Shown here piece after piece: positions 1,486 through 53,256 of a stretch of 64,000 nt of DNA. Origin of the DNA: Lepidodermella squamata. Its lineage: Eukaryota; Animalia; Gastrotricha. The notes under the pieces were generated by a model. It saw only the letters and a list, made by a program, of their open reading frames with translations, had not been told where the DNA came from and did no database searches. The stretch covers positions 1,860,001 to 1,924,000 of the forward strand of contig JBLDXI010000054.1 in NCBI GenBank assembly GCA_047495785.1. Direction: 5' to 3'. The first letter of the stretch is position 1. Each line of letters opens with the position of its first letter. Both the position numbers and the translations under genes were made by a program.

Positions 1486-2447
1486 GGCAGCACCAGTGAT
1501 TACTCTTACCTCTAAATCTTGAGCAGAACCAGAACCTTTTTTCGATATACTTATTTATATATAAATAGCTGAATGTCGCTAAAACGTTTAGTAAGATTGC
1601 AGCAAAAATGCTAAGAAAATAAATAAAATTGATTAATTTTAAACGAATGTAGTGGAGAGCCGTAAATAAAATGAAAGAAAGTGGAAATGTTCTTATCTTG
1701 CTCTAACCTCCGCAACGGAACTTGCTTATCCATAATGAGCGCTGATTCCAGCCGCCTATTTCGGCTGGCAGTGAAAAACCAGTCAACCATAATGCGCCGC
1801 CGGCAATAGCATTAGCAAATGCTGTCGTTATCGAACGCAGCACGAATTTGGCTAATTTCCCATGTTTCAGCACAGTACCGATTCCTGCTGCTACGCAGGG
1901 CTGGATTAACGCATATGGGCTTGAAAGGCTGCAGCCCAGGGACCACCAGAAAAAATGGTGACGACTTCGATTTGCTTGAATATTCGCGCAGCCCGATCCT
2001 CGGTTCGCTTATTACTAAAAATAATTCATCTCCGCCGATCGCATATTCACTTAACTTTCAGCTCTTTTTATGCAGAGCCTGAAGCTGCATAGTGCCTCTA
2101 TCCTAAAGGACCTTCAAAAGGTCGGGGATTGTGACACTTTTGTACATGTACTGATTTTATTGCAGGTTGAAAAAACGTCTGACTGCGGAATTAGCGATCA
2201 TATTGCCCTCACCTTTTGCCGGTTTCAAATTCAAGGATGAGGAACCTAAACATGAGAGAAGAAAATTTTGGAGCTATGCTGACGAACTTATAAGTTAGTG
2301 GACATCGGATGATCGATAGCTTTTCAAGAAAACGGCAATACTTTTCCTGAAGCGGAAAGTGTCGGTTAATTGATTTTTGACACAGTTCTTTTTCACAGAA
2401 AGGAAAGCATCATCTATATGCGCGTCAGTTCATGTAATAATATAAAA

Positions 2448-3614: not shown

Positions 3615-4049
3615 AATTCAGTTGAAGACTTCAAGGAGTAAAATGTATTGCAGTGCGCATTATATTTTATTTTGATGTTGAGAGCCAGCATGCTGTTCGC
3701 TCATTCAATATTCAATCCATTTGATATAGAGAAACATTGAGCAGAAAATTTAGGGTGGAGACATTGAACATTGAACATCGACGCTAGAAGCACTCTAAAA
3801 TCGGGTGGGCTGCGTTCCAGTGTTTACAATGATAATAGCAATCCGGCAACAAGCTTGAACATTTTTGATTGAAATTAGATGAAATCGACTTGTTAGCTGC
3901 AAGTTATAGCAGCCAGTGCTCTTCTCTTTCACTTTAAATTGAAATCGGAATGATATCGGAACCGAGTTTCGTAGCTCATCAACTCTCGATTCCAAAGCTG
4001 TTTGTCTAAGGTGTGCGGGTCAAGTGCGCCGTGTGCGATTCAGAGGGAC

Positions 4050-4215
4050 GAACTACGGACAGACGACAGACGGACGGACAAACAATTTTGACAGTATAGT
4101 ACCGGGATTCACCCGGGATTCACCCGGAAAAACCCCCAGCAAACCACAGAGGGACCCTTTGGTCATGACATTGGAAACCAAAAATACCCCCTAGCTCGAC
4201 GATCTTACTTCTCAG
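4050..4215. mobile_element. Dispersed repeat, possibly a non-autonomous Helentron/HINE-like element
   Basis: GACAGACGGAC-type microsatellite at about 4056-4080 and an 11-bp tandem CCGGGATTCAC. Positions 4125-4207 match the reverse complement of 55838-55917. Confidence 0.45.
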
Positions 4216-4596
4216 TGTTAGACCTAGTCCCTAGTCGGATCACTGCAAGGAATCTTCTTTTCTGAAGTCCTGAGTCCTGATTGATCGGACCTGGCTTGAT
4301 ACTTGTTGAATTCCGGCAAAATTTCGAGTATAAATATAGACAATACGAGGCGAGGCATCTGATTCCAGCTCCAGCCCAGATTTGAGATAGTTGATGCGAT
4401 AGGGCTCAAATTCCTCACCAAGCCTCATATTACTCTCCTTCTTCGACGTTTGTTTGATCACCATGGCTCAAAACGGAACAGGAAATTGGAACCCGATCAC
4501 GCCCGATCAACGATCAACTAATAATTCCAAACCTTCAGTAACATAAAATCATAATTTGAAGAAACAAGCTCTAGTTTTTACAGCCTCAGCGAAAAA

Positions 4597-5766
4597 ATGG
4601 AAAGCATACTTCTGGCGATTTGCATCTTCGTCACAACGGGTTTCGCCTTGGCAAAGCCACCAGATAACGATACTATTTGGGATTTCGATCCAACGAAAAC
4701 AATTCTGAGCAACTGCAGGATGGGCCCGACAGTCAACAGCCCACACGAATTCGAGGACGAACGAACGACTTTAATCACGATATCCTTTCAACCTAAGCTC
4801 CTCACTGAAATCGACGACGTGGCAGAAACCTTTACCATGGACAGCGTACTGGTCATCGAATACCAATCGAGCTGCTTAGCAAATTTGTATCGGAACATAT
4901 CTCGCAATGGCGACGTAGCATGGCCGCGAGGTTTGGAAGACCTGTCAAAGGAGGACCCGGATCAATACTGGTCCCCGACGTTGTTCCATCAGAATTCTAT
5001 CGGAAGTTCAAAAATGGATGACGGTTTTTCCAGAATAGTTCGCATCCCCGTGAAGAAAGGCGTGTTTTCTCTTGTTATCATAGGGAAATTCGCGTCCTAC
5101 TGCAATTTTGACGTGACTTATTTCCCATTTGACAAGCATACGTGCCAAGTGGACTTCATCATCATGCAGAGCCAAACGTTCTCAAGATTTGTCAAAGCAT
5201 CTTTCCTTTCATATGCTACCCCGTTCATGAAGTTGAATTCTGGCTGGGAACACGACTTGGCAACACGATCCTGCTCATTCGGCACATTTTTCTCCGGCCG
5301 AAACTCGAATTTCTCCAATGCTAGCTTCTACTTTGAATTCACTCGAAAACCACAGTATTTTTTGACGTATTTATACGCGCCGAGTTTGATTCTAAGCCTA
5401 ATGATTCTGTCGTCATTTCTCATCCCAGCCGATGCTCCAGACCGCCCAGCTTTTGCGTGCACAGTTATGTTGGCGATTTTCGTTCAGCAGAATAGCATCC
5501 AGGAGAATCTCCCCAAGACCCCAAAGCCAGTTGTCGCTGGAATTTTCAGCCTATCACAGACCATCATTGCTATGTGCTGTGTTTTGTACGCCGCGTTTAT
5601 GTGTGGATTTATTGCGCTGTTTCCTGAAGCAGCGTGCAAAACATACAAAATCTGCGGAAAGACCATTGCTATGTTTGTAATAGTTGATGTCGTAGTATTT
5701 ACACTGACCCTAGCTCTGTACTGCCTTTCCAACATTTCAGTATGCATCATCCTCTCACAGCTGTAA
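4597..5766 (+). CDS. Divergent Cys-loop pentameric ligand-gated ion channel subunit, intronless (389 aa)
   Basis: Signal peptide, loop A WSPTL, Cys-loop CNFDVTYFPFDKHTC (C-x13-C), pre-M1 RKPQYF, four TM helices and a short M3-M4 loop. No vicinal loop-C cysteines. Confidence 0.95.
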   Translation: MESILLAICIFVTTGFALAKPPDNDTIWDFDPTKTILSNCRMGPTVNSPHEFEDERTTLITISFQPKLLTEIDDVAETFTMDSVLVIEYQSSCLANLYRNISRNGDVAWPRGLEDLSKEDPDQYWSPTLFHQNSIGSSKMDDGFSRIVRIPVKKGVFSLVIIGKFASYCNFDVTYFPFDKHTCQVDFIIMQSQTFSRFVKASFLSYATPFMKLNSGWEHDLATRSCSFGTFFSGRNSNFSNASFYFEFTRKPQYFLTYLYAPSLILSLMILSSFLIPADAPDRPAFACTVMLAIFVQQNSIQENLPKTPKPVVAGIFSLSQTIIAMCCVLYAAFMCGFIALFPEAACKTYKICGKTIAMFVIVDVVVFTLTLALYCLSNISVCIILSQL

Positions 5767-6782
5767 TGACGTTTACATGGAAACTATTGTTGAGCTCTTG
5801 AGAACCAAACGGCTCTTTAGCGAGATAAAACCGCCTGAAAATTTGAAAAAAGAAGTGTGGTACAAATTTTATATCATTTGATAGAGATGGATTATGATTA
5901 TGGATCAGATAATTTATCCAGATTTCTTTAATTTTTCACAGTCAACAACCACAACAACACAGTCATCTCAAAGTTTAAGCACACTTCCCTCGCGCATTGC
6001 TCCAGTTTATTTCAGCCATGGCAGTCCGTCTCAGACCGGTTTGAGATGATTTCGAGAGTGTTAGTATGGGCACGCGCGTGATTTATACTAAAATCGCTGT
6101 TTGATAGCTTATATTGCGACTTTTCGGTTAACACTTGCAATCATGCCGCGCAGCGGCAGCCTTTCATCGGAATTTAGGCCAGACTCGATGGCCGCGCCCC
6201 AAAATCAAAGAGAGCGGCCTTTATTGCTGGTTGATTGCGCGCTCGAATTTCGGACCGGGTATTTTCCCGTTACGCTGGTATTTCGAATTTTCGCAGTTTC
6301 AGCATTTTCCGGACTAACAAAACGTTGTTAAAATCCGGATTACGGTGATTAGCAGGTGACTTAGGGTGCTGCGTTCAAATAGCCAAATGCGCGCACACAC
6401 CACTTCACGCCCACTTGTGCTGGAGTAGCCAGTCACGCACACACTCTGTGTTCGAATAGCCATTGCGTGACACAAATTTTTTTTGTCCGAATAGCCACAT
6501 TCTATTTTAATGAGGAGTTTCAAGAAATTGAGGAGTTGAAAGCAAAAGAATGCTTGAAATTCTTCACCTTCTTAAATATCCTCATTAAAATAATGCGCAT
6601 CGAATTCGCCTTCTGCGGAATTTTACGGCCACACTGTAGGTGCGACGCATTACTAAACATGATTTCCAGCTACTTAACCATAAATTCTTTCATCGTTTCA
6701 TTTGCCGTATGAATTACAATCATTCGTCGTCACATCAGAGACTGTAAACTTGTTTTGCAAATTTTAACAGACAATATCCATA

Positions 6783-9080
6783 ATGAATCAGGTTATTCTG
6801 TTTAGCGTAGCAGTTTCGTTTAGCTACCACGTCTCCGATGCTGAAAAGCCGTTCAACATGTCCATATTAGGTATTGTTCCTAAAACCTACTTCGGATCCA
6901 TTTGCAAGTTGGGCACTGATCTTGTAATTGAGACCATCAATAAACGTTCAGATATTCTCCCCGACTACAACATCGTAATGGAATGGAAAGACGAAGTCGA
7001 TTCGGCTTTAGGTTATTCACCGCTTGTCGAGTTTCTGAAATATAAAGCGTCACCTTCGAAAGATAACAGCTTTCAAGCTCCGTTGTACTTCAGTGGCTTC
7101 TTGTCCAATGCAAATATCCCTCTTGGAAAAGTTCTACACCACTTAGATTCTGTCGGTATATGCTTCGTTTGCGGATCTCCAGTTTTAGTAAACCACAAAG
7201 TATTTCCGAATCTCTATCAAACTGTGACTACAAGTGACATTGAAGAGTCAGCTAACGCCAAATTTATTAAAGTAATTGGGAAATGGACAAGGATTGGGAT
7301 TCTAACAACTGTTCTGAGCGATTATGACATCATGGCCGCAAAATATTTTCACCTGTTCGCTAAAGACGAAAATATGACGATACCTTATTTCAACGCTGTT
7401 TTGGGAGTCGATAGTTCCGTTATTGAAGAAATAGTCAGTATTGACATTCGTATACTTTTCTTATCCATTACCGTTCGCCCGATGCTTTGGTCTTTCCTCT
7501 GTTTCGCATACAAACGTGGCTTGACAGGTTCCCGTTACGTTTTCTTAGTCAATTCTTTTCCAGCGCAAAATCCAGCAAACATTACCCAAACAGACCTTGT
7601 AGACAACGATTGCACCCATGCGATTCTAGCAGAACAGTTCAAAAGTATAATTTTTGCAGGGGTGGCATTGTCGCCTTCCGACAAGTCTCGAAAATCTGAG
7701 TTGGGATTTTCAATTCAAGAATTCGACTCCCTTATCGATGCTAAACTTGGATACCACAATGAAGATAACACCCGGGCATATTTATGCCATGATACTGCGG
7801 TGACCGGAATTATGGCTCTTCATGACACCAATTTGCAGTTGATGAAATCATGGAATACCTCGATCAAGGGACATAGCAGCAGGGAACAAGTCGCTAAGGT
7901 GATGAATGAATCAGTTTTAGCCATAAACCGCGCGGGATTTCGACGTCAATTGCGCTACAACCAGCGCGGAGCTAATGACGAGGACATTGTCACTTTCATG
8001 CGATGGAATGGGTATAAATTGCTTATCAATTACCAAAGCCAGCCGGAAAAGCAGGGTTTCACTATTGAAACTGTCCCTTCTGGGCTTGCCTTCGAAAAAT
8101 GGTTCGGTGGTCGCCCAAAAGATGCAGCATGGCAGCGAATCATTGTTGATGGAGTCTCAAGGCCCGTTGCTATTTCAGTATTCTTTTTCAGTGGGGCTGT
8201 CACATCTGCTCAAGCTATATCGATCGGTTTGCCATTTTTCCAACGGAACATTGGGCTATACGGCTCGCTGACAATAGCGAAACTATTATGCATTGCTGCA
8301 TGCACGTTGCTGAACATTGGATCAGTGCTGGCTGTCTTAGAAACAACGGGGGCAATGCAAGTGAGTAGGATCGTTATTTTCACAACTTCCGTCTCTTTCG
8401 TCAATGGGATCGTCAGCTTTCGAGCAATCAATCTATTTCGAACGAGCCGTCAGGCTGCAAATGCTCTAAAGAGGCGATCAACTCCAAACCGTATAGCCCT
8501 ACGGAGGGTAAAACCCAATCAAATGAAAGCTGATGCTGTTCAAGAATTAGAAAATGGTGCTTCAAACTCATTGATAATGCGCGCTTTTTGCTACCTAGCA
8601 GTGAATATAGCTGTAGTGATTGTTTGGCTTTCAATTGATGGTTTCACTTGTACCAAGATTGCTAATGCCTCTGATTCATTCTATGACCAGACTTCGGACA
8701 CTTCCTTCTCGTTTGAGGTGCTTCGATGTGGTGTGACATGGAATACTTTGATGATATTGGTTTTAGCCGGAATGCAAATTTCGCTCGTGTTTCTCGGCTT
8801 CGTTCAGGCTGTTCGCCTCAGACCTTTTGTTGGCATTCTAAAAAATCACCCTAATTTTCCGTCAACTTCCTTAATCACAGGATTAGCTAGTATGAACGCT
8901 CTGATGCTTTTCATTTGCGTGTTTGTCTTGGCCATTGCTACTTCTTCGCAGAAATTGCAACAGATTTTCGTAGCTTATGGAGCTCTTACTCTTTCTGCAT
9001 CAACTTCGGTCATTTTGCTATTTATGGATCTGAAAATGATTTTCTTCAAACCGCAAAACAAAGTCGCAGTGGGCTTGTAA
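6783..9080 (+). CDS. Class C GPCR, GABA-B-like architecture (Venus flytrap + 7TM), intronless (765 aa)
   Basis: Signal peptide, ANF/VFT motifs (INKRSDILPDY, FPNLYQT, KWTRIGIL, AYKRGLTGSRYVF), no Cys-rich domain, and seven hydrophobic helices at the C-terminus. Confidence 0.92.
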   Translation: MNQVILFSVAVSFSYHVSDAEKPFNMSILGIVPKTYFGSICKLGTDLVIETINKRSDILPDYNIVMEWKDEVDSALGYSPLVEFLKYKASPSKDNSFQAPLYFSGFLSNANIPLGKVLHHLDSVGICFVCGSPVLVNHKVFPNLYQTVTTSDIEESANAKFIKVIGKWTRIGILTTVLSDYDIMAAKYFHLFAKDENMTIPYFNAVLGVDSSVIEEIVSIDIRILFLSITVRPMLWSFLCFAYKRGLTGSRYVFLVNSFPAQNPANITQTDLVDNDCTHAILAEQFKSIIFAGVALSPSDKSRKSELGFSIQEFDSLIDAKLGYHNEDNTRAYLCHDTAVTGIMALHDTNLQLMKSWNTSIKGHSSREQVAKVMNESVLAINRAGFRRQLRYNQRGANDEDIVTFMRWNGYKLLINYQSQPEKQGFTIETVPSGLAFEKWFGGRPKDAAWQRIIVDGVSRPVAISVFFFSGAVTSAQAISIGLPFFQRNIGLYGSLTIAKLLCIAACTLLNIGSVLAVLETTGAMQVSRIVIFTTSVSFVNGIVSFRAINLFRTSRQAANALKRRSTPNRIALRRVKPNQMKADAVQELENGASNSLIMRAFCYLAVNIAVVIVWLSIDGFTCTKIANASDSFYDQTSDTSFSFEVLRCGVTWNTLMILVLAGMQISLVFLGFVQAVRLRPFVGILKNHPNFPSTSLITGLASMNALMLFICVFVLAIATSSQKLQQIFVAYGALTLSASTSVILLFMDLKMIFFKPQNKVAVGL

Positions 9081-9699
9081 TATTCCTATTCTACCACTTA
9101 TTTCTTTATAAATTCATTATTATAAAGAATGACGCTGAGGAAGCAAGGAATATTGTCTATATTATTACATTTTTTGAAGCAATAGCAGCTATAAACTTGA
9201 ACCAATATTTAGAGGACAGACTGTATGTGAGATACAAGTTCTCATCTAAGGACATTTTTCCTGTCGCGCCTCTAGACGCCTGTCTTTTCGCTGATTAGCG
9301 TATCTTATATTAATCCTCATTATATATTGTATAATGTTCAGAAAGTTACTAATGAATTACTGAAATCCACTGTTTTTTCAGTATCAGTGAAAGTACTGAT
9401 TCTAATTAGAATGTGCGATTTCAGTACCGAGGTCTGAGGTGACTTTTTCAACATGCCCTAATTTCTGTTGTGCTCGACTTTGATCAATTTTTCGGGCATC
9501 CACGCAACAAAATAATAACAATTAACTAATTTTCTTGTTCATGCCCGAGGTCGAGTGGGGTGCAGCTAAGAAAAATCACCCTTCGACTTGATTAGATAAA
9601 AAGCCTCGACAAAGCCTGACATGAATGTAATTAATTCACGACCCTCGTTAATTTCTTACTGCGTGTCTTGAGATGTATATTCAGCAAAAACCGACATAC

Positions 9700-26033: not shown

Positions 26034-29000
26034 TCAGAAGTAGCCGGTCTCCCAGAATGGATAAATGAAAACCGCCATAGTCATGATAGCTAGCAGTGAA
26101 TAGACTGCCAAATCAACATAGCGGCAAAACTTCTTCTTATATTTCTGCTGACTCAGCCAGAGCATTGCCAGGCTCTGCGTCGTCAACAGTAAGGAGATGC
26201 ACTCCAAGCAATAAATAACATCGCTGATTAAAACGCGTTGATTGGATCGCGGAATTTTTCCAGCAATAGGCCCGATCGATGCTGTGTATGCAAGCAGCAG
26301 GTAAACATTGAAGCAGGCCCGATCGCTGTTATCCGGCGGCAGAAAAATCGTACTAAGCGCCAGGAGAATCAACACGAAACATGGTCCAAGCAAGTTGTAT
26401 AGAAAATAGTCGGGCTTGCGGCGCAGCTCAATTGAAAATATGACCCGGCTCGATGCCAGCTCGCTTCTAAGCTTCGGGATAGTTGTCTCAATCTTGTATC
26501 CAATCGGTCGAACTCGCCACTCTTCTAAGGTGCTAGCTGAATCCCCATCCATCGTGATAAGGCTAGCCTTAGTCACGCTGACGAGATTAACCGGTTGTTC
26601 AACAGTGAATACCAAGCTGCAGAGTTGGGTATCGAAGGGGAATTTGGACAAATCAAAGTCGCAATTAGCTTCAAACAGGCCGTATTGCTTCCAATAGAAA
26701 TACATTGGCCAGTAAGTGGCGTTGTCCCACGTTTGATTCATATAGATATCCATGTAGTTAGCGAACGACGACATTCCTGAGTCACTGGCTGCGTTTTCGA
26801 AAGTGATACCTGGATGCCAGATTGAGTTGACATCGACTGCCCGAATGCGATCGGAGACGAAAGATTCGTCGAAACGGCATCTTACAACCAGCCATTTCGT
26901 GTAAAGCTGACCGGTGATTGCGAAGGATTTTTCAGCCTCTTGAACCTTTGCAAGTCGATCGAGGGAGAACGTCATTCTAATAGGCAGCATGGTTGGCAAG
27001 GGGCTTCTGTTGGATGAGGATAGGTCAGGACACCACCGGATCAAGTCATCTACAGCTAAATTGGTTAGAGGTTTAGGAGGCGGGGGCACGGGGAAAGCCG
27101 CAGCTTCAGCAGCTTTTTCCAGATTCTCGTAAATTAACCCAGAAATTGTGGAGCTTGTTGCTGATCCAACAGTACTGGCACGTGGTCCATTAGAAGTTAT
27201 CGTTACAGGAACAGGATTCGATGTTGAACGGCTAACTAAAGGGGTTGAAGTACCGTAAGGCACCGAGGTACTCGGCGATCCTGTAGTAACAGATTGCTGT
27301 GAAGTTATCGGAATCGATGTTGTTTCGGGGAATTTAACAGTCGTAGTAAAAGAAGATGATGTGGTGATGGGCTCCGTCGTGGTTGCTGTGAAGGTTGTGC
27401 TAACAGAGGTCGTCATCGCACTGGTGGTTGCAGGCGATGGAGTAAAAGGATCAATGGATGAGCTGTCAGATGTTGGTGGTATTCCTGTCACAGCTATGTT
27501 AACAATTTCAGCTTTGCTATCATAGTCAGCATTGGAAAACCCGGACACGATCGCGATTATGTGACTTCCTTGCTTTAACAAGTCAGCAAATTTAGCATTT
27601 TCAGCATTGTTAATACAAATAATCCTCGTGGCTGGATCCCATTGTCGGATTAGTGAAACATTCAGATAGCCATTCAGGATAGCCATTCAGGCTGGTTATT
27701 GAGTAGGTAGCGTCGTCCATCCCAGTTGTTGGAAACTCGCACGATCCAATTTTGAATTCGGGTTTCATGTTACTCTGGTCGTGTAGAAAGATGCTTGCAG
27801 AATCATCAAATAAGTTCACGTTAATCAATGATTTAAAAGGATAGAATCGTATTTGGAAACCAGCTTTAAAACTTCCGCCGGTAGGTTTCAGCCCATAATT
27901 CTCTATTTCAGCGCATTCATCTGAATCCGGTTTTACACTGTTGAAAGTGATCAAAGATCAATGAATTATTCATTACCTGTTGTCCTAGCTATGCTGTCGC
28001 TATGAACAATGTAGATAGCATAGCCGTCATTGTTTGTGAGCTTTGGATTTGTTGCAATCCTTATTTCAATGTGAGTGTTTTCATCGGCCTGCATTGCGAA
28101 GGTTTTAGTTGAATGAAGTACGGCCCGTTTTGAAGCACCCGACTCAGGAAATTCAGTTATCATGCCGCCGTCAGTTTTAGCGTCGCAAGCTACTTGCCAC
28201 GCACCATTCCCTGTCAAGAAAAAAAAATCCTCCCCGTGAAACTGACTATCTCTCACGAAAAAACTCACTCAAACCGATTATATTGCTGTAGTAAAACTGA
28301 CTGAAGAACAGTGTAGGGTCATAACTTGCAAATGTGGGATAATCGATGAAAAATTTCTCCGATCCACGATTTTTCACTGACAATAGTTGCTCTTTATTGA
28401 GCGCCATGGGGTATAGCGATAACCACGAGGCAAATGTCGGCTGGTTTAACTTGAAACCGCTGCGACGCAAGCTGCGACCGCAAGGAGAAAAGCGCCTGAT
28501 GATGTTTCTGCCGGCACGCCTGTGGCCAATAGCATTCTCACAATTTCGCTTTCACAAAACATGGTATAGGTTCTGGTTTTGTTTTCGAAGGATACAGCCA
28601 CAAATTTCCAACCGTCATTAAACTGGCAATCACCATACATTATTGCTGACCCCCCGTCAAATAAGTATAACGTATTTGGACTGTATCCCCCCGCATAATT
28701 AGCCCATAGATGAAGACCAAAGCCTGTTTCGTCTTTGATGAACTCAAGGATAGGCAACATTTCTTGCTGATCGGCTTTGAAAAACAGAGCAAATGTCCAC
28801 GATTGGCTCCGTAGTGATAGCACAGGGTTCGAGAAAGAAATCTCATCCTTTTCTCCGGTTGTAACTTCGATGTAGGAGAAACTCAATTGAGGATCAGCGA
28901 GGAACTCCGTAATGCCTGTATTTTTGCCGTCGATTCCTCGGCCACTAACATCACTCAGCCAAGTTTCTGCTCTCAACGGCCAAAATGCTATAGGCGCTGG

Positions 29001-29054
29001 CAGCTTGACGCTTTCAACGTGAGCGAGGCTGAATAGAAAAAAAGGGATCAGCAT
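26034..29054 (-). pseudogene. LamG + L-lectin-like + mucin stalk + Cys-loop channel gene with two frameshifts (pseudogene, null allele or assembly error)
   Basis: Signal peptide and LamG-like domain (AFWPL..SWTFALFFK..WKFVAVS). In-frame introns 28211-28268 and 27921-27976. S/T-rich stalk, Cys-loop CDFDLSKFPFDTQLC and four TMs. Frameshifts at about 28470 and at a 13-bp duplication 27665-27690. Confidence 0.85.
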
Positions 29055-37148: not shown

Positions 37149-38514
37149 CAGCTGATGATTTTGAACACAACTTTATTGTAACTTGTGATTACGAATAACG
37201 TTCTCCGTTGTAACAGTGGAACAGGATCCTCGAACTATGGGGAATTTTCAGGCAAACTTTTTTACTTGTTGGTGGTTTCCACCTCGGGCTGCCGAACAGG
37301 GTCACTACGATACCCCTCATTCCCATCCGTACTTCGCGCCATGTCCGTCAATTAAAATCGTTTTATTTAGAAACTGTTTAGGATACCTTATATCTTTTCT
37401 GTCAGCCTAAGGTAATCCATTCTTGAAGGACGAAAAATATGTGAGACTTTGCCAGCGATTTCGGCCCTGTCTTCATCTTCAGTCGTTAAACGTAGTACAT
37501 AGATGGTTTCGCAATGATGAATATGTGCCGTCTATTTTCTTTTTAAATGACTAGATATGGATGAAACGGCCTACCACGTCTCGCTTGTTTTCCATATACA
37601 GATTGCGGACGTTGAATGTAGGAGTTTACACGAAATTGAACAGAAAATATGTCTATTTTCAGCCGACTAGAGAACGAGGAATTGATTTTTCAAGAGGGAA
37701 TGACGTCTAGCAACAGACATTGACAGAATAAATTAATTAGCGGCAAAATCTAATGGACGCCAAGGTCTCAGGTCTCAGACAGCGTTCCTGAATTTTTCTA
37801 AATACATAGGCTGTTTTCATAGGTCAAAGAGGACAACTCACAGATTTCAACACCATCAAATGCGAACTTCGTCGTGTTAGAAAGACGTCGTATATCACAA
37901 TTTCACCAATTAAATAACTGAAAACAACTGACAGTACGGGTAAGCACAGACAGACTTCAATAATAACATAATGTTATTCAAAGAAAAAGAATTCTTCTCT
38001 GAAAATTTAGTTGTAAGGGATAAAGATCGAGCACGAGATATCGCCATAGGCTATAAGATCTCAGGAAGTCACGTGTTAGCGTTATACCGAATTGTCTTGG
38101 CCTTGATTTTTGTACCGAGAATCCAGACATCCAGAATAAATGTTTTCATAAGCTTTTTGCTTTTAAGCTGCGTTGCCCGAAGGTTCAATTTGTTTAAAAT
38201 CGACTTTTCGTCTCCCCGTGAGTTCGACTTCATAATTCTTCGTCTTGAATTCGTTATAACGTTTTTCTTGTTTCAATACTTTCCCATTCCTATGTCCCAT
38301 ATCATTAGCTTGATTAGAACTGTCTGCAGGGATTCATTATATATTACTAATATGCATCATCTTGATAGAGCTCGGGCTAAACTTAACTCATCTGCGGCTG
38401 GAATTTCCGGCTGTAATTAGGTCGATTGAGCAAAAAGCACATATAATCAATGTACAGTGAATGCTTTTATCCTCAGTTTAGATAGCTCATCCTTAAACCG
38501 CAATTTTGACCGAA

Positions 38515-40968
38515 ATGAAACTCAATCCTTCACGGATCTTCTTGATACTGTTCACGCATCAAGTGTCTACTGCTTTGAAGCCGAACCGGTTGACCATACT
38601 TGGCTTACTTCCGCTGACCAACGTCGATCCAAACCAAACTGAAGCTACAATAGCAGCTGCTCAGTTGGTAATTGACGTGGTTAACAATCGGAGTGACATT
38701 CTACCATACTATCACCTCGATTTAGTGATCGAGGACGAGAATCAGGGTAATTCCGATGTTGCAAGATTAGTCGAATATACGAGATGGAAGGGCGAATATC
38801 GATCTCCACTGGTTGTCGGAATGGCATTTTCACACGGCTGTGGGTCAATGATCCCAGTGTTGAGCCACCTTAAAATGGTGGCCATTTCAACCTTTTGCCA
38901 GTCTCCGAATCTTTTTGACCCAGCAACCCGTCCTAATTTGTTTCTCACTCTGTCTACAACGAAAACAACAGCCCTCGCAATGCTGCGTTTCATGAGTGAG
39001 ATCGGAAATTGGTCGAGATTCGCCCTGTTAACTAACATTGAAAACGACGATGACTTCAGCACGGCTTATTACCTCCACAATCGAGCAATAGACTACAACT
39101 TCACGGTCCCTTGGTTCGCAGCTGTCACAGAAATAGATAGCGGAACTTTGGCTAGCCTGAGGCGTTCAGATCTGCGAATTATCGTCATTGCGTCTTCGAA
39201 TGCTTCATTCGTTTCTGAATTTATGTGTAAAGCTTTCAAAATCGGCATCACCGGGAAGCGATTTGTTTTTCTTGGCTTGATCGGAGGATTTACAACTGAT
39301 CACTCCGGTTACTGCTCTGAAGAAGCGATTGAAGAACAGCACAAGCAGTGGTATTTTTTCGGAAGGTAAGCTATTTACCGCGATAGTAAATTGTAATTAC
39401 AATAACTTCTTCTCAGCCGAACCAAACCGCTGAATGATTCTCAAATTGCTGAGTTTGATTTAACAAGCCGGGACTTTGAAGAAATGATATCTATGAAGCT
39501 CAATATTTCGAGAGATTTCTCAGACTCTTTTCTTCGTGGCTACGCTGTTTTCGACACTTTCGCCCGCGCTGTCATTGCACTGAATGACAGTGAGACCATA
39601 CTCAATGCCGAACATAAGCTCTCCCTATCGGACTACCTTAGCCGTCCTGATGTCATTTTCAAAGTTACGAAGCAGGCTGTATTAAGCTCCTCGATTCGAA
39701 GTGTGCGTGTTGGTGAGATTCACTACGACTACGCAAGCCAGCAGTTAAGCGGTGATATTCAAGCTGCAACACATTGGTCTCCTGAAGAGGGCATGCATAA
39801 TGTTGCTATGATTGGCCTTGGTGGGGATCGCAATGAACTTCACCTGGAGGACTATGAATTTGAAATTGTCGATGACGATATCGATTGGATATCAGGGACA
39901 CCACCAAAGCAGGAGCCTTCAATTTTCGTGAGCTACGTCGAATTCCCTTGGGGAGCTAGGATAGCTTCAATAGTCATCAACATGTTGATTTCAGTGGCTC
40001 AGCTGATCGCTCTAACTCTTGCGCTTACAAAGAAATTCCGAAATTCGAAGTATTTCAAATCTTCGAAAATAATTGGCATATTTGGATGCATCATACTCAA
40101 TTCATCCTCAATTTCGATTTCCTACATAGCATCCGGTGATACTTTCTCTCTTTCGATAGCACTAGTAAGCTTCGGAGCATCTCCAATCTATGGAATTGCA
40201 TCTTTCAGGCTTATAATGATCTACAAATTCGTTTTGAGTAGAACCAACTACTTCCAGAGATCGAGCAGCACAAAACAACGCTCGATTCCAAATAACAGCC
40301 CTGTTTCTAGAATCTTCAGTGATCGTGATTGGATCGCATTGGATAAAACTTCCTCCAAACTCACCGCAACATTCGTATTCCTGAACTTTATTCTGACCAT
40401 TGCTTGGTTGATAATAGCTGATAACGCTTGTATCTTGGAAATGAATGATCATGTTATCTACGATGAGGAGTTAGATAGGTTTGACGAGACCAGGTACTTG
40501 AGATGTGGCCCGAGTCCAATTTCAGCTTCTACTGCATGGATCCTTCTTGGAATTGTGGGCGGGATCAATCTGTCCTTACTTCTCGCTGGTTGTATGTCTA
40601 CATTCAATTTGAGGAATATTCATGGCGTGCCAGAGTCTTGTGTCGAGTTCGCTCCAAGCTCCGCGACTCATCTCAACGCTATTACAACATTTTGTGGCGT
40701 AGTATTAATAGTGCTGATATCGTCCTCTAATTCAGTCACTTGGATGCTAGCTTTGGTGTTCTCACTTCAATTTATATCTGTAACGACATCGATCGGTATG
40801 CTCTACCCTAATTTCAAGGAAGCTAAAACGACCGCTCTCACTGTTGGCGTCGCTCATGACTTGACAGTTTCGAATAGGGATCCTGTATTTCATTCATCAC
40901 TTTGGACTAAGGGAACGCGATCACGCAGCCATTCACTCCAAAATAACACCATTGGCCCGATAGCATGA
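38515..40968 (+). CDS. Class C GPCR, GABA-B-like (VFT + 7TM), 2 exons
   Basis: VNNRSDILPYY, RPNLFLT, NWSRFALL and AFKIGITGKRFVF. In-frame intron 39366-39416. Seven TM helices. Clear paralog of the 6783 gene. Confidence 0.92.
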
Positions 40969-41721
40969 GCGGGGAAAACTGAGATAGTTCAAAATTGCAA
41001 TTCACTCCAAACATTTCAAATAAACGTGCCAATCGTGCGATGAGTCAAGTTACACATTTTCATTATCAAAATATCTCAGACAGTCTCAGGTCGGCCTTTT
41101 GCACTTACAAGTGGTTTGAAGACCATTAGCAAAGTGAATGCGAGAAGAAGGTCTTCGGTCTGTAATTTACCACCAATAAGAATTCCTCTAATCTTCTCAA
41201 GGAATTCTCTAGATAACGTGACACGTTGATAGGAACGGATACCACGAAGCATACCAACAGCAATATTGCAAATAAGGTCAATGCAATGGTTCCAACCCAG
41301 CATACAGTCTGGTAGAGGGTTTTTTCTTAGATCATAGCAAGGCGGATATCTTTCATTGATATTGATCATTCGATGTCGCGAAAATCTAGTCGAATAGCAT
41401 TTTATGCGTTGTTTTGAATTTGAATCGTTTTGCACGACATGCGCGAAAATTACGCCTCTCGGCTAAACCTACCGTTGTTGCGGGGTACCTGGAACTATGC
41501 GGGGTAATGATGCTAACGTCTAGTTCGTAAACGTTAAAATAAGTTTATGTCAGACTCCGGAAAATTCCTTGTTTAATCAATTAAAAATTTACAAGATGTT
41601 CAAAAACCATCGAGGCGTGGCTTGTAAGAATTAGGATATTTCTTTCAGCTTTCAGCATCTTAAAGTTTACAGAGAAAGGCACAGAGAAAGGTTGCAGTTG
41701 ACACACAAGTCCTTATGTCAA

Positions 41722-43845
41722 TTAGTTTCCTTGCAATATAGCAGAATAGATATGAATAACAATAAACGCGCCAGTAGCGGCTATCGATGCCACAAAATCG
41801 ATGAACCGCAACGGTGTGAAATATCGCAGCCAAATTTTGGCTGGTTTGCTTTTGTGAAAAATCCAACTAGCCAACCAAATCGTTAGCAAATCATAGACTA
41901 CAACAGTCGCTGCGAACCATGTCACCATTTGCGTATAAGTGCATAGAACCGTTTGCATCGATTTCTTCGGGACTTGGCTCAAAACCTCGGTTTGAGACAC
42001 CGTTAGAGCTAGAACAATCGTAGCTGTAAAGGCAGACCGATCTGGGGCTGAGGGTGGGATGCAGAAGCTAGGCAAAACCAGTGAGGCTAAAACAGCGGTT
42101 GGCATGAAGAAATTTTGTATATAGTAATCAGGCCGCCGAGCCAAAGTCACATTGAAATTCACCCGAGAAACTTGATAGGCATTGAAAACTTGGGAATCAA
42201 TCACTTTCCCGGTTGAAATTAGTCGCCATTCATCTTGCGGTCTCATATCCTTCAAAAGCCAGGTGAAGAACGAAGGACTTGCGAAGGTTATTAGATCTTT
42301 CGACCTCTGAAGGGTGAAGCTAATGACACAAGTTTGAACATCAAAAGGAAATTTCTCGAGGTCAAGATCGCATTTCGATTCAAACAGTCCTTCACGCGTC
42401 CAGTAGAACGTGAAAGTTCGATTCTGTAGGGTGTTAGCGTTTTTCGAGTTCATCTTAACGAAAAAGTCCTCTCCAACTGGGACGTAATTCATGTAAATGT
42501 TAGCGTTAGCCTGAGAGATGAACCTCAACCTCGGCACCCAGACTTCACTGGGCGACAGGACTTGAACCTCTTCGAAATCCCGATCTGTTATGACGTCAGA
42601 CGAACTTGTCGGGCAGGTGTTGACAGACCACCACAACAGAGCGATGGCACTCACTGAGATCGATTCTTCAATGTTGTCTATCCCCATGAAACTCGTTACT
42701 TGAAAGGCGACATTGATCGGGAGAGGTGAAGACGTGAATGTAGGTGGAGCGACTCTTGTTGCGAGGAAATGGTCGCAAACTTTGGTGACACTCGTCGCAT
42801 TTTCAAGCAGTTCACTCCGCTGCGGGCCGATATCTGGAATAAGCGCTTGAATCCCTTTCTCTTGAAAAGCAGTTGAAATTTGGGGCGTCGTTAGTATCAT
42901 TGAACTTGGGGTTGTTGGTTTGTCTGTGACGAGCTTAGCAGTTGAAGTCTGCTTTGAGGTTGTTTTAGTTGAGACTTTCGTGGTCGAACTGCTTGCCGAA
43001 GTTGATGGCGATGACGACGATATAGCCTTTGTTGATGTAATTGAAGTTGTTGCTGTTGATGCGCTTGTTGAAGTACCAGAAGTGGTTGTAGTACTCGAAG
43101 TACTTGTTGAGGTTGTAGTCGTAATTGTTGATGTCATTATCGTATAAAGCTCTTGCCAATTAGCCCAGGTAGTGTAAAACCTAACATACGCAAGTTTACC
43201 ATTCCCGGGGAGCGAAAGCTTAGCAGACGACCCGATATAAATCGTGTCGAAGCCTGAAAGCGTAGGAAATGGCGACGCTTGGTTTGTGAATGTGAAAGCG
43301 TATGAGGTAAGGGATGCTGCTCCTGGATAGCCGGAATACATAAATAATTCGTAATTACTGTCATTGATCGTTTTGAGAACGACGCCGATAAAAGTCCAGC
43401 TCGAATCCGTTATTACGATGTTAGCATAGATGGGTGCGCTGCTAGTTTGAGTAGAATTGATGAAGACCGATTTATACGTGTAGTATACGTCTAGAAAGTT
43501 CACAAAGTTCAATATCCCAAAGTCGCTGGTCATACTCGACGGAGCCTTAATGAAAAAACAAATGGTGAAGTCTTTGGGAGCCACCGATTCCACGGTATAT
43601 GCAGCAATATACCCCAATCCTTGTGACAGCGTATGAGATCCCCCGGCTTGAGGCCCATCGCCTGATACAACTGGTACAACTGCGACGTTTGGTATACTCT
43701 TCGGCTTAAATGTATCCCCTGAAGCGAGGTAGCCGTAAAGACTCGCCGTTGAATTCAGTGGCCAGTATCCAACTAAAGATGCAGGATTTAAGGCGGCTTG
43801 GCTTTGGTGAATGGAAACTGTCAGCAGAAGGGCTAGCAAGAACAT
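41722..43845 (-). CDS. Intact Cys-loop channel subunit with N-terminal LamG/pentraxin-like domain and Ser/Thr stalk (707 aa, intronless)
   Basis: Signal peptide; LVGYWPLN..DFTICFFIK..SWTFIGVV..IYIGS..GKLAYVRFY; about 85-aa T/S stalk; WVPRL; Cys-loop CDLDLEKFPFDVQTC; RRPDYY; four TMs. Confidence 0.95.
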   Translation of the reverse strand: MFLLALLLTVSIHQSQAALNPASLVGYWPLNSTASLYGYLASGDTFKPKSIPNVAVVPVVSGDGPQAGGSHTLSQGLGYIAAYTVESVAPKDFTICFFIKAPSSMTSDFGILNFVNFLDVYYTYKSVFINSTQTSSAPIYANIVITDSSWTFIGVVLKTINDSNYELFMYSGYPGAASLTSYAFTFTNQASPFPTLSGFDTIYIGSSAKLSLPGNGKLAYVRFYTTWANWQELYTIMTSTITTTTSTSTSSTTTTSGTSTSASTATTSITSTKAISSSSPSTSASSSTTKVSTKTTSKQTSTAKLVTDKPTTPSSMILTTPQISTAFQEKGIQALIPDIGPQRSELLENATSVTKVCDHFLATRVAPPTFTSSPLPINVAFQVTSFMGIDNIEESISVSAIALLWWSVNTCPTSSSDVITDRDFEEVQVLSPSEVWVPRLRFISQANANIYMNYVPVGEDFFVKMNSKNANTLQNRTFTFYWTREGLFESKCDLDLEKFPFDVQTCVISFTLQRSKDLITFASPSFFTWLLKDMRPQDEWRLISTGKVIDSQVFNAYQVSRVNFNVTLARRPDYYIQNFFMPTAVLASLVLPSFCIPPSAPDRSAFTATIVLALTVSQTEVLSQVPKKSMQTVLCTYTQMVTWFAATVVVYDLLTIWLASWIFHKSKPAKIWLRYFTPLRFIDFVASIAATGAFIVIHIYSAILQGN

Positions 43846-50100: not shown

Positions 50101-50345
50101 ACGGCATCGTGAAATCGAAGCTGAGGGTAGCGAGGACGAGTATATTGAGCAGCTCGACTGCACAATGAGTGAGCTTGAGGATTGGCAGGCCGAAATGTGG
50201 GAGGAATTGGAAGAGATTGAGGTAACAACATTTTTTATTAAAAATTCATGCTTCAATTTTCGATATAATTAAGGATGATGAGGAGCGGCTAACAATGGCA
50301 GCGTGGATGGTTGAGGAGTTCAAAGATATTGTTAAGCGTACATGA
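44183..50345 (+). CDS. nompC: TRPN/NOMPC mechanosensitive channel (about 29 ankyrin repeats + TRP membrane domain), multi-exon
   Basis: About 29-30 ankyrin repeats counted across spliced exons. TRPN-type segments EHNTEALMEDKKF, HKVPIIKFM, FGPLSII and TRP box DEEWQFG..LIRNM..PTPLNL. Final exon 50274-50345, AATAAA near 50395. Confidence 0.93.
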
Positions 50346-50748
50346 GTTCGCGTATTATTATATCAATTATATCTGTTGAGCAACATAGCACATCAATAAA
50401 CACAACTGGAATAAAAACCCACAAGTATTTGGTGATCATTTATTAATCATTTAAGGCTATCATTCAACCAAGGCATGCAGTACGTTAGTATCCTACACTA
50501 TCACCCAGTTTTGACAATATTTGTGTACCTTTGTAAACTTAAATTTCATCGCTGGGAGTGAATAATACGCGATGATCTTTTATTCATAATTATTCAAATA
50601 TTATTGTTCATCTTTAGACTTAAGACACGTGAGAAGAATTGACAGCTGAACTTGCTTGGAGTGGTGCCATTATCATTAACGGCACCCTGGATCGAAAACA
50701 TAGACAATATATCAAGCGCAACTACTGAGGTGAACAAAATCGCCAGCC

Positions 50749-50755
50749 TATAAAA
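50749..50755 (+). promoter_or_regulatory. TATA box of the peptide precursor gene
   Basis: TATAAAA about 120 nt upstream of ATG 50868. Confidence 0.55.
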
Positions 50756-50867
50756 CGTGGCTAGAAATGGTGAACAAGTCAATTTTCATCAACAGCAATA
50801 TTTCATCAAAAGCAAATTTGTTTTCGAATACTTTATCAGTCAGTCCTTTAATTTGAAGCCAGAAATA

Positions 50868-51866
50868 ATGATGTACAAGCTAACGATAGCAGCCTGCTTG
50901 GTGAGTTTTTCCTACTGATGAACACTTTACATAACGATGATAATTACGTTTTGAAACTAGGTAGCAGCAGTCATTGCAAACCCGCTCATGGAGGCCATGA
51001 GAGGCGAGAGCGAATACCAAGAAGCAAAACGTGAAGACAACTACCAGGAGGCCAAGCGCGGTGAAGAGAACTACCAGGAAGCCAAACGTGGGGAAGAGAA
51101 CTACCAGGAAGCCAAACGTGGGGAAGAGAACTACCAGGAGGCCAAGCGCGGTGAAGACAACTACCAGGAGGCCAAGCGTGGGGAAGAGAACTACCAGGAG
51201 GCCAAGCGCGGTGAAGAGAACTACCAGGAGGCCAAGCGCGGTGAAGAGAACTACCAGGAAGCCAAACGTGGGGAAGAGAACTACCAGGAGGCCAAGCGCG
51301 GTGAAGAGAACTACCAGGAAGCCAAGCGCGGTGAAGACAACTACCAGGAAGCCAAACGTGGGGAAGAGAACTACCAGGAGGCCAAGCGCGGTGAAGAGAA
51401 CTACCAGGAAGCCAAACGTGGGGAAGAGAACTACCAGGAGGCCAAGCGCGGTGAAGAGAACTACCAGGAAGCCAAACGTGGGGAAGAGAACTACCAGGAG
51501 GCCAAGCGCGGTGAAGAGAACTACCAGGAAGCCAAACGTGGGGAAGAGAACTACCAGGAGGCCAAGCGCGGTGAAGAGAACTACCAGGAAGCCAAACGTG
51601 GGGAAGAGAACTACCAGGAGGCCAAGCGCGGTGAAGAGAACTACCAGGAAGCCAAACGTGGGGAAGAGAACTACCAGGAGGCCAAGCGCGGTGAAGAGAA
51701 CTACCAGGAAGCCAAACGTGGGGAAGAGAACTACCAGGAGGCCAAGCGCGGTGAAGACAACTACCAGGAAGCCAAACGTGGGGAAGACAACTACCAGGTT
51801 GCCAAGCGTGGTGAAGACAACTACCAGGAGGCCAAGCGCGGTGAAGAGAACTACCAGGAAGCATAA
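50868..51866 (+). CDS. Multicopy secreted peptide (neuropeptide-type) precursor, 312 aa
   Basis: Exon 1 50868-50900 and exon 2 from 50961 (intron gtgagt...ctag) give signal MMYKLTIAACLVAAVIA. This is followed by 29 peptides separated by KR. Repeat variation is almost all synonymous in this frame. AATAAA at 52073. Confidence 0.9.
51030..51863 (+). repeat. 30-bp coding tandem repeat with 60-bp higher-order periodicity
   Basis: Alternating GGGGAAGAGAACTACCAGGAGGCCAAGCGC and GGTGAAGAGAACTACCAGGAAGCCAAACGT units. Six identical 60-mers at 51361-51720. Confidence 0.97.
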
Positions 51867-53256
51867 ACAACTTGAGCGATGACAGCAGTAAGCTCTGTTA
51901 CGGTCTACCACCAGGAAGTAGAGTTTTTTGTGGTTTCGTCCAACGGTTTCATCTGTTTCACCTTCATTGCTCTTAAAGCCATAATCCTCTCATTTGTTAT
52001 TCGCAATAATAGCTGGCAATCATGTGTAATATATATCGCTTCATCAAGTCATCATAATCGCCTTGCAAATTGAATAAATAATGCAGTTCGTTCCAAGTTA
52101 CGAATGGCTTTTCCACATGTAGAAAATGGAAAAAATCTCATATAATTTCAATTAGTAGGTGAATAATTTCAACTGTAGTTAATTTCTTATTTCTTAACAG
52201 CAGGAATGGCTCGCTCGTCCTGTTTCTCTGAAAGAAGTATATGAAACAAAAAGAAGTTGAATATTCGCCTCGTCGTTTTTCAATCGAGGTGGAAAGTTGA
52301 TTGATGGAGAAACGACGCATTTTGAGCCAGGCAACCGATTGACGACGAACTTCGAACTTCTAAAGTTCTCATCTGAGTTTTAGTATGGTGTTCAACGTGG
52401 CATGGTCATAAGACATAAGACGTTACAGTGTCCTACAAGTCAAAACTTTAGGGACCCATTTAGCAAACAATAAGTTGAACAAGCTCAAGAACAAAACTGG
52501 CTAAGTTTTAGTCTTGATTCTTATCTAGATATCTAGTTGGGTATATTCGGCCTAGTCGGCATTATCAAGGTCATTCAACAATAAGCAACATAACTATCAG
52601 GTTTGCGGCGAAGTCCAGCTTTACGCAATCTGGAACAAAATTTGTATCCCTAACGATTTCCCATCGTGCAATGCATTACTGACCCTTTCGATATAGGTAA
52701 TGCTGCTACATGATGAAATGGTGTCGATATGAGTTCAATTCCAAAATGGACATGAAGAACAAACTCACAGAATATAGTTTATTTTAAAGGCATTTAGGAA
52801 TATTGTGATAGTAGTTGGAGCCACGTTCAGTGAACCATGAAGGCAGCTCCCTGGCTCCTCTGAAACACTCTATGCAATGCTATGGGCGCTATATTCATAA
52901 GAGGTTAGATTATTACAGAGCAACAATCACTACAAATAATAATAAAAACGCTCGAAATGAGAAATTAACGGCTAGGAAAAGTGCGAGACTGCAAGGCGTC
53001 CAACTATGTGAACTAAAAATAATGTAGCTGCTATACAGTTGAAATGAATCTAGGTGTGGCAAAGCTACTTTCAGGAGAGATTTGAGAACTATTTTGTTCA
53101 ATCGAAGGCCTCTCGATCCAATTCTCAAACGCTAGAGTTTGAACCCCAAAACATGTGTACAAGGTTGCACAAAGCAATATAATCAATGATCAATTCAGAT
53201 ACGAATAACAAACTAAAATGTAGTCTGCTGATGCGTGATATCTTGCTTGATACTTC

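What the first reader, a model, noticed from the sequence alone, without database searches (positions are those of the whole stretch)
50868..51866. Unrecognised acidic octapeptide precursor: 29 KR-flanked GEENYQEA-type peptides
Seen: TATA box, spliced signal peptide, then 22x GEENYQEA, 4x GEDNYQEA, 1x GEDNYQVA, plus GESEYQEA and EDNYQEA. Each is followed by KR and the last ends at the stop codon. There is no Gly before KR, so no amidation. Established: signal peptide plus dibasic-flanked repeats defines prohormone-convertase substrates, and Tyr in an acidic context is the typical sulfation target (as in CCK/sulfakinin). I recognise no matching family. Inference: a new non-amidated, possibly sulfated neuropeptide, pheromone or secretory peptide. 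Speculatively, GEExYQ echoes the conantokin-T N-terminus, which raises possible Glu carboxylation.
Basis: partly seen in the sequence, partly recalled or inferred. Interest (0 to 1): 0.82.

Follow-up and report, generated by a model that had tools for sequence, protein, structure and literature searches.

The report
Secreted multi-copy acidic tyrosine octapeptide precursor
This is a real, spliced and transcribed animal gene that encodes an export signal followed by 29 near-identical acidic eight-residue peptides, each separated by a Lys-Arg cutting site. It belongs to a family of at least ten genes with no relatives in public databases, and neither cutting into peptides nor any function has yet been shown.

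Summary
The gene has two exons (50868-50900 and 50961-51866) and encodes a signal peptide followed by 22 GEENYQEA, 4 GEDNYQEA, and one each of GEDNYQVA, GESEYQEA and EDNYQEA. Every unit is followed by KR except the last, which ends at the stop codon.

- **Expression:** a contig of a probable RNA run removes exactly the predicted 60-nt GT..AG intron.
- **Selection:** repeat units differ almost only at synonymous sites (62 synonymous against 8 non-synonymous), and only in this reading frame.
- **Family:** the genome holds at least ten paralogues. They encode GEENYQEA, GEA[AG]YEEA, EAGYEEAQ flanked by RR, and a 13-residue variant. All share the TATA box, the split signal peptide and a last unit that ends at the stop codon.
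- **Machinery:** the genome encodes at least eight P-domain convertases, 7B2, a tyrosylprotein sulfotransferase and a gamma-carboxylase.
- **Relatives:** none were found in Pfam, the word search, the exhaustive 1.84-billion-protein search or the literature.

My best reading (about 0.6) is a precursor cut at its dibasic sites into free acidic octapeptides, which may be sulfated. I could not resolve whether neurons or gland cells make it. The main rival is an uncut acidic repeat protein. The genome's statistics match the published gastrotrich Lepidodermella squamata assembly.

The scan already found this family at other loci of this genome (s1-407519, s1-374097). I class it as a new member of a known kind, of moderate interest.

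The parts
50749..50755 (+). TATA box (TATAAAA within GCCTATAAAAC), about 118 nt before the ATG
   Evidence: Sequence. The same GCC(A)GCCTATAAAA element sits at the same distance in 8 of 9 paralogue upstream regions. Function is inferred.
50840..50867 (+). Part of the 5' UTR covered by a transcript contig
   Evidence: X1 contig record 1 matches 50840-50899 with 0 mismatches. Its remaining 25 letters upstream do not lie on the window, and 50838-50839 is AG. The true 5' end (TATA-driven start or a trans-spliced leader) is unresolved.
50868..50900 (+). Coding exon 1: MMYKLTIAACL, the first 11 residues of the signal peptide
   Evidence: Translation. Conserved as M[MIV][YFC]KL[TAM][IL].A.L in the paralogues.
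50901..50960 (+). Intron, 60 nt, GTGAGT...CTAG
   Evidence: An X1 contig skips exactly these 60 bases with GT..AG ends. X1 shows no depth in the intron, while the DNA run X2 covers it.
50961..50978 (+). Start of exon 2: VAAVIA, the end of the signal peptide. Predicted signal cleavage is after VIA.
   Evidence: The hydrophobic core of residues 1-17 has GRAVY 2.0, V at -3 and A at -1. By inspection only; SignalP was not available.
50979..51002 (+). Short pro-piece NPLMEAMR, ending in a single Arg in this copy
   Evidence: Translation. The paralogues have NPLFEAKR or NPLGETMRR here, which are dibasic.
51003..51863 (+). Array of 29 octapeptide units, each followed by KR except the last
   Evidence: Synonymous-only variation in this frame.
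51864..51866 (+). Stop codon TAA directly after the last ...QEA
   Evidence: All paralogues likewise end right after the ...EA of a unit.
52073..52078 (+). Candidate polyadenylation signal AATAAA, about 210 nt after the stop
   Evidence: Sequence only. Not tested.

Best explanation
The gene encodes a secretory polyprotein. The 17-residue signal peptide takes it into the ER. In the late Golgi and secretory granules, a Kex2/PC1/PC2-type convertase cuts after each Lys-Arg. The P4 residue is Glu, so this is not a furin R-x-K/R-R site. A carboxypeptidase then removes the two basic residues. About 28-29 free acidic octapeptides result (GEENYQEA, 938.36 Da, charge about -3), without amidation. The single, almost invariant Tyr may be O-sulfated by the genome's TPST before cleavage.

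The peptides are then released as an extracellular signal (neuro/endocrine peptide or pheromone) or as a bulk anionic gland secretion. Which of these applies is not resolved.

Shown here: the gene structure, splicing, transcription, selection on the peptide sequence, and presence of the enzymes. Inferred: cleavage, trimming, sulfation, the secreting cell type and the target.
For: - **Architecture:** signal peptide plus 29 units, each ending in KR, with the last ending at the stop codon.
- **Transcription:** spliced transcript contig.
- **Selection:** among distinct 30-nt units, 62 synonymous against 8 non-synonymous changes where 82% non-synonymous is expected (P about 1e-37). The figures are 47/14 and 11/0 in two paralogue groups. 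The other two frames show the opposite pattern.
- **Dibasic site kept:** the site survives although its residues changed, from ...EA-KR-G... to ...EAQ-RR-E... in the C29 and C40 genes.
- **Composition:** no Cys, Ser/Thr, Pro or N-glycosylation sites in the array, so nothing suggests a folded, cross-linked or mucin-like product.
- **Machinery:** the genome has at least 8-10 P-domain convertase loci, a 7B2/secretogranin V homologue and a TPST orthologue.
- **Family:** at least ten paralogues share the promoter, the split signal peptide and the layout.
Against: - No mature peptide has been observed.
- The octapeptides have unprotected ends (no amide, no pyroglutamate), which is less usual for signalling peptides.
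- The first unit of this copy is preceded by a single Arg without upstream basic residues.
- The K-to-Q plus G-to-R change also conserves charge, so it does not prove cleavage.
- The array ending right after ...EA in every gene can be explained by common descent.
- AlphaFold2 (single sequence) draws two long helices at pLDDT 77 and pTM 0.22, so an uncut helical polyampholyte is not excluded.
- There are no orthologues in other species to test deeper conservation.
- Run X1 is RNA only by inference.
Confidence: 0.6

Rival explanations
1. The protein is secreted uncut as an acidic, Tyr-bearing decapeptide-repeat polyampholyte. It could be a matrix, cuticle, egg-envelope or adhesive-system component. 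The KR pairs would then serve charge patterning rather than cleavage.
For: - AlphaFold2 predicts long continuous helices at moderate confidence.
- There are regular K/R-to-E spacings at i+3 and i+4.
- Decapeptide Tyr/Lys repeats occur in secreted structural proteins such as mussel foot protein 1 (from my own knowledge).
- Very high summed contig depth over the family fits a bulk product.
- The KRG-to-QRR change conserves charge.
Against: - The array has no Cys, Pro, Ser/Thr or Gly-rich motifs typical of structural secreted proteins.
- Every residue of the unit, not just composition or charge, is under purifying selection.
- The two basic residues are always adjacent, and Lys-Arg is the classical convertase site.
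- pTM is only 0.22, and single-sequence helix predictions for charged repeats are unreliable.
Confidence: 0.2
2. It is specifically a neuropeptide precursor, made in neurons and acting on a GPCR. This is a sub-case of the best explanation.
For: - The layout is that of multi-copy neuropeptide precursors.
- The 7B2/PC2-type pathway is present.
- The animal is a bilaterian with an exact mir-124.
- Neuropeptide mRNAs can be very abundant in tiny animals (from my own knowledge).
Against: - There are no cell-type data.
- The peptides have no amidation or other end protection.
- At least ten genes encode about 200-250 copies, which fits a gland product at least as well.
- The receptors in the window are 7-47 kb away, and the linkage carries no weight.
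Confidence: 0.3
3. The peptides are gamma-carboxylated on Glu, like conantokins.
For: One clear vitamin K-dependent gamma-carboxylase orthologue is encoded: HTTM domain at E 2e-53, and about 34% identity to vertebrate GGCX over 83% of the query.
Against: The peptides are 8 aa against 17-27 aa in conantokins. The only non-repeat pro-piece is 8 aa, too short for a carboxylase recognition sequence. No Pfam conantokin match was found. A six-residue match in acidic low-complexity sequence is expected by chance.
Confidence: 0.03
4. It is an expressed but functionless minisatellite that happens to be open in one frame.
For: Repeat arrays stay open in several frames. ORFs of 283-343 aa exist in three other frames or strands.
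Against: Synonymous-only variation occurs in exactly one frame. That frame is joined in phase to a conserved signal-peptide exon through a verified intron. The family has diverged at the peptide level while keeping the layout.
Confidence: 0.02

Closest known systems
Multi-copy neuropeptide precursors of invertebrates (for example FMRFamide or Antho-RFamide precursors with about 20-36 copies)
   Same: Signal peptide followed by many near-identical short peptides separated by dibasic sites, made by PC-type convertases plus a carboxypeptidase.
   Different: Those peptides end in Gly as an amide donor and have basic or aromatic C-termini. Here there is no Gly donor, the peptides are strongly acidic, and there is no sequence similarity.
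Orcokinin / pedal-peptide type precursors (non-amidated, acidic, multi-copy)
   Same: Non-amidated, partly acidic peptides in many KR-flanked copies.
   Different: Those peptides are 13-15 aa with the conserved N-F-D-E-I-D / F-x-x-F type motifs (from my own knowledge). None is present here, and no homology was detected.
CCK / gastrin / sulfakinin
   Same: Tyr in an acidic context is a candidate for TPST sulfation, and TPST is present.
   Different: No C-terminal amidated motif, no Gly donor and no Pfam Gastrin match. It is not a member.
Conantokins (Conus)
   Same: N-terminal G-E-E-x-Y-Q string, and a gamma-carboxylase gene is present in the genome.
   Different: Octapeptides rather than 17-27-residue helices, no long propeptide, a different phylum and no family match.
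Fungal Kex2-processed repeat proteins / yeast alpha-factor precursor
   Same: Signal peptide plus tandem KR-flanked short peptides, often in multigene families. The same processing logic applies.
   Different: Fungal rather than animal, and unrelated in sequence. Here the animal context is shown by mir-124, Cys-loop channels and GPCRs.
Predicted 'small negatively charged releasing factor' of flatworm duo-gland adhesion (PMC6410801)
   Same: A small, strongly anionic secreted molecule in a relative of flatworms that also has duo-gland adhesive tubes.
   Different: Purely a functional analogy. The flatworm factor is unidentified, and nothing links this gene to adhesive organs.

Membership tests
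Convertase-processed multi-copy secretory peptide precursor (architectural class) | N-terminal signal peptide | tested here: met
   MMYKLTIAACLVAAVIA has a K in the n-region, a 13-residue hydrophobic core (GRAVY 2.0) and V-I-A at -3 to -1. It is conserved in the paralogues. By inspection; SignalP was not available.
Convertase-processed multi-copy secretory peptide precursor (architectural class) | Repeated peptides bounded by dibasic sites | tested here: met
   28 KR sites in this gene. The paralogues have KR or RR, with the site kept after residue changes.
Convertase-processed multi-copy secretory peptide precursor (architectural class) | Processing enzymes encoded by the organism | tested here: met
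   10 P_proprotein matches, 8 of them at E<1e-17. A 7B2 homologue at E 1.3e-8, above the cut-off.
Convertase-processed multi-copy secretory peptide precursor (architectural class) | Mature peptides actually released | not testable with these tools
   Needs peptidomics.
Neuropeptide | Expression in neurons or endocrine cells and action on a receptor | not testable with these tools
   Only whole-animal contigs are available. There are no cell-type data.
CCK/gastrin/sulfakinin | C-terminal amidated ...M-(D/R)-F-amide type motif with a Gly donor | tested here: not met
   Units end in ...QEA followed by KR, with no Gly. No Pfam match at E<=10.
CCK/gastrin/sulfakinin | Sulfated Tyr | tested here: inconclusive
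   The Tyr is nearly invariant, with 3 acidic residues within +/-3, and a TPST orthologue is present. However, K/R also lie within +/-5, and there is no chemical evidence.
Conantokin | 17-27-residue peptide with several Gla residues, preceded by a propeptide carrying the carboxylase recognition sequence | tested here: not met
   8-residue units and an 8-residue pro-piece. No Pfam match.
Conantokin | Gamma-glutamyl carboxylase available | tested here: met
   HTTM match at E 2e-53. Best named relatives are vitamin K-dependent gamma-carboxylases.
Orcokinin / pedal peptide | Conserved 13-15-residue peptide motif | tested here: not met
   The motif is absent from all units. The motif itself is recalled from my own knowledge.

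The most novel reading that the evidence does not exclude
The octapeptides (charge about -3 each, more if sulfated) are made in huge amounts from at least ten genes. They could be the 'small negatively charged releasing factor' that has been predicted for duo-gland temporary adhesion in flatworms but never identified (PMC6410801). Here it would be found in the flatworms' sister phylum. More generally, they could be a gastrotrich-specific sulfated peptide hormone or pheromone system with an unknown receptor.
Probability: 0.1. Interest if true: 0.8.

Novelty: new member of a known kind. Interest (0 to 1): 0.45.

Why it matters
If the peptides are released, this would be a peptide family with no known relatives, from a phylum (probably Gastrotricha) with no published neuropeptide or secretory peptide catalogue in the literature I could search. 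It is encoded by at least ten genes and about 200-250 peptide copies, so it is likely one of the animal's major secretory products. The predicted masses make it directly testable by mass spectrometry. It would also add a non-amidated, strongly acidic and possibly sulfated type to the known range of invertebrate peptides. The family is also a clear example of a 30-bp 'satellite' that is really a coding array under strong purifying selection.

Tried and rejected
**Searches for relatives (all blank or spurious)**
- Pfam on exon 2 and on a paralogue found nothing.
- The word-based homologue search with exon 2 gave no hit.
- The ESM Atlas gave no usable hit.
- The exhaustive phmmer search gave 506 hits. 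The top 150 are unrelated period-10 low-complexity proteins such as GPSPYVEPKR or EDNPESGKKR repeats, none with Y[QE]EA[KR]R and most without a signal peptide.
- Literature string searches for all family peptides gave no relevant paper. The only NYQEAK hits are serum albumin.

**Organism identification**
- Searches for cuticle collagen, CPR cuticle protein, let-7, COX1, innexin, connexin and GH6 were all blank. I treat these as inconclusive, because the tool's first look may miss eukaryotic families.
- For a while the blanks led me to consider a sponge. The exact mir-124 hairpin rejects that.
- A silicatein test found only ordinary cathepsin L.
- The class C GPCR homologue search found nothing.
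- A candidate spliced-leader string near the 5S gene matched no paper.
- The look-up of encoding contigs is blind to this genome.

**Other**
- The Sulfotransfer_3 hit on C42 is not a TPST.
- Trans-splicing at 50838-50839 is not established. The AG is not conserved in all paralogues, and the unmatched 25 letters of the contig were not shown.

Full report
**Observation**

The window sequence at 50300-52300 holds an ATG at 50868. Eleven codons follow (MMYKLTIAACL), then GTGAGT at 50901 and an AG at 50959-50960. An open frame then runs from 50961 to a TAA at 51864-51866.

Joined in a script, the model gives 312 aa. It consists of a 17-residue hydrophobic leader (…LVAAVIA), the pro-piece NPLMEAMR, and 29 units: 22 GEENYQEA, 4 GEDNYQEA, 1 GEDNYQVA, 1 GESEYQEA and 1 EDNYQEA. 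Every unit is followed by KR except the last, which is followed by the stop.

Tandem Repeats Finder reports a 30/60-nt array at 51031-51859. The two alternating 30-nt unit types differ at four positions, all synonymous.

**It is a transcribed, spliced gene**

Two public runs hold the stretch. Their contigs were laid on 50400-51075.
- Run X2 (2024) covers everything, including the intron, so it is DNA.
- Run X1 (2015) has no depth upstream of 50837 and none in the intron.
- One X1 contig matches 50840-50899 without a mismatch and then continues at 50960, skipping 60 bases with GT..AG ends.
- The DNA run shows no such joint, so this is a processed transcript of this very copy.
- Summed X1 contig depth over exon 1 and the repeats is very high. 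It pools paralogues, so I use it only to say that the family is strongly represented.

**The frame is under selection**

I cut the arrays mechanically into 30-nt units.
- The three GEENYQEA genes have 27 distinct unit variants, with 62 synonymous and 8 non-synonymous codon differences from the consensus, where 82% non-synonymous is expected.
- Two other paralogue groups give 47/14 and 11/0.
- In this gene the coding frame gives 14/5, and the other two frames give 0/16 and 1/16.
- The long ORFs on the other strand and in the other frames are therefore by-products of the repeat.

**A gene family**

A six-frame search of the window's own genome (121.2 Mb, 151 contigs) found 32 matches. Reading the loci gives at least ten genes:
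- GEENYQEA genes on C54 (this one), C19:3086425 (32 units) and C2:986502.
- GEAAYEEA/GEAGYEEA genes in two clusters on C2 (about 884-895 kb and 987-995 kb), with an identical copy on C135. One gene mixes both peptide types.
- Genes on C29:2975730 and C40:230452 whose unit is EAGYEEAQ followed by RR.
- A gene at C19:2909989 with 13-residue units, YRPREEN[VL]QEA plus KR.

All share a GCC(A)GCCTATAAAA box about 118 nt before the ATG, an 11-codon first exon, an intron of about 60 nt, an exon 2 that starts VA[AT]V..NPL, and a last unit that ends at the stop. Nine genes read in full hold 197 units.

In the RR-type genes the K of KR has become Q and the following G has become R. A dibasic site survives one residue further on. 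This fits selection for a cleavage site, although it also conserves charge.

**Machinery**

The genome has:
- ten P-domain (furin/PC-type) matches, eight of them strong;
- a 7B2/secretogranin V homologue;
- a clear tyrosylprotein sulfotransferase, whose exons on C21 match human TPST1/2 at E 2e-26;
- one vitamin K-dependent gamma-carboxylase orthologue.

Cleavage, sulfation and even carboxylation are therefore all possible in principle. None is shown.

**No relatives**

Pfam finds nothing. The word-indexed search of 5.8 billion proteins finds nothing, and the Atlas finds nothing. The exhaustive search of 1.84 billion representatives returns only unrelated period-10 low-complexity proteins. Full-text searches for every peptide string of the family give no relevant paper.

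The joined two-exon protein was never sent to a search or folding tool.

**Structure**

AlphaFold2 on exon 2 alone draws two long helices (mean pLDDT 77, pTM 0.22). For a charged repeat without an alignment this is weak evidence. It does keep the uncut-protein rival alive. The array contains no Cys, Pro, Ser/Thr (one Ser) or N-glycosylation site.

**Organism**

The neighbouring genes are a rhodopsin-type GPCR, class C GPCRs, three Cys-loop channels, a tyrosine kinase and ankyrin, PAN and BTB-RCC1 genes, so this is an animal. An exact mature mir-124 sits in a good hairpin (z -5.1) at C33:2859271, which points to a bilaterian.

Earlier notes of this scan suggested a spiralian, 'probably a gastrotrich'. 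The published Lepidodermella squamata assembly is 122 Mb in 157 contigs with N50 3.9 Mb, 43% GC and 28,377 genes (PMC11660948). This matches the present genome: 121.2 Mb in 151 contigs, contigs of 3.6-5.5 Mb, and 42-43% GC in the window. The match is circumstantial, not proof.

That paper does not mention peptides. I also found no gastrotrich neuropeptide catalogue.

**Interpretation**

The best-supported mechanism is a secretory polyprotein cut at KR or RR by Kex2/PC1/PC2-type convertases. The P4 residue is Glu, so these are not furin sites. Carboxypeptidase trimming would then leave free acidic octapeptides, possibly Tyr-sulfated. I give this 0.6.

Whether neurons or gland cells make the peptides cannot be told from these data. 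The gene number and the abundance fit a gland product at least as well as a neuropeptide.

The main rival (0.2) is an uncut acidic repeat protein. The conantokin-like carboxylation idea is very unlikely (0.03).

A speculative but testable reading comes from flatworms, the sister phylum. Detachment of their duo-gland adhesive organs is predicted to use an unidentified small negatively charged molecule (PMC6410801). Gastrotrichs also have duo-gland tubes (from my own knowledge), and these peptides are small, abundant and strongly anionic.

**Verdict**

This is a new, orphan member of a well-known kind of gene. The same family was already reported by this scan at other loci of this genome (s1-407519, s1-374097), with the same conclusions.

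Noticed in passing
L014 (G000:C25:1257300-1262400), about 1000-1900 and 3350-4000, + strand: Two neighbouring genes encode more than 20 tandem copies of a different ten-residue unit, QDAANPEGSR. It is flanked by a single Arg and has no dibasic site. The scan has already noted it (s1-398090).
   Followed up: partly
L013 (G000:C42:486000-488700), about 1083-1553, - strand: A 157-aa open frame begins with a hydrophobic leader and then repeats EAEANL[MI]EAQR[GS]ISGRRPRR. This may be another processed repeat precursor, only distantly similar to the present family.
   Followed up: no
L003 / L019 (G000:C2:985002-988637): A short 62-aa GEAAYEEA gene ends about 100 nt before the signal-peptide exon of a 222-aa GEENYQEA gene that lacks its own TATA box. 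This could be a tandem duplication or an operon-like pair.
   Followed up: no
L010 (G000:C19:2908800-2912000), - strand: This paralogue has 13-residue units, YRPREEN[VL]QEA plus KR. The core Tyr is replaced by Val or Leu, and a new Tyr-Arg-Pro-Arg is added at the N-terminus. This suggests a change of function.
   Followed up: partly
window 50838-50840: The X1 transcript contig starts matching right after an AG and carries 25 further unmatched letters. This could be a spliced leader or an upstream exon. Against that, a conserved TATA box lies 90 nt upstream. Unresolved.
   Followed up: partly
L040 (G000:C33:2857771-2860790), 1501-1520, - strand: An exact 20-nt mature mir-124 sits on the 3' arm of a stable hairpin (-42 kcal/mol, z -5.1). 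Rfam misses it, probably because of its long loop.
   Followed up: yes
L041 (G000:C2:2908301-2911419): The 5S rRNA gene lies on the opposite strand, about 230 nt after the 28S end. It is inside an 8.46-kb rDNA unit that is arrayed at several contig ends (C2, C5, C17, C22, C27). A possible small RNA gene with a GT donor lies about 200 nt from the 5S gene (compare s1-422642).
   Followed up: partly
G000, many contigs: There are more than 50 mostly intron-free papain-type (cathepsin L-like) protease genes, often in tandem clusters on C3, C6, C10, C15, C31 and C55.
   Followed up: no
window 2370-9298, 26034-29054, 37971-43845: The window is dense in receptor genes: one rhodopsin-type GPCR, two class C (ANF-receptor) GPCRs and three Cys-loop channel genes with long single exons. 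The scan has already noted them (s1-398053, s1-398201).
   Followed up: no
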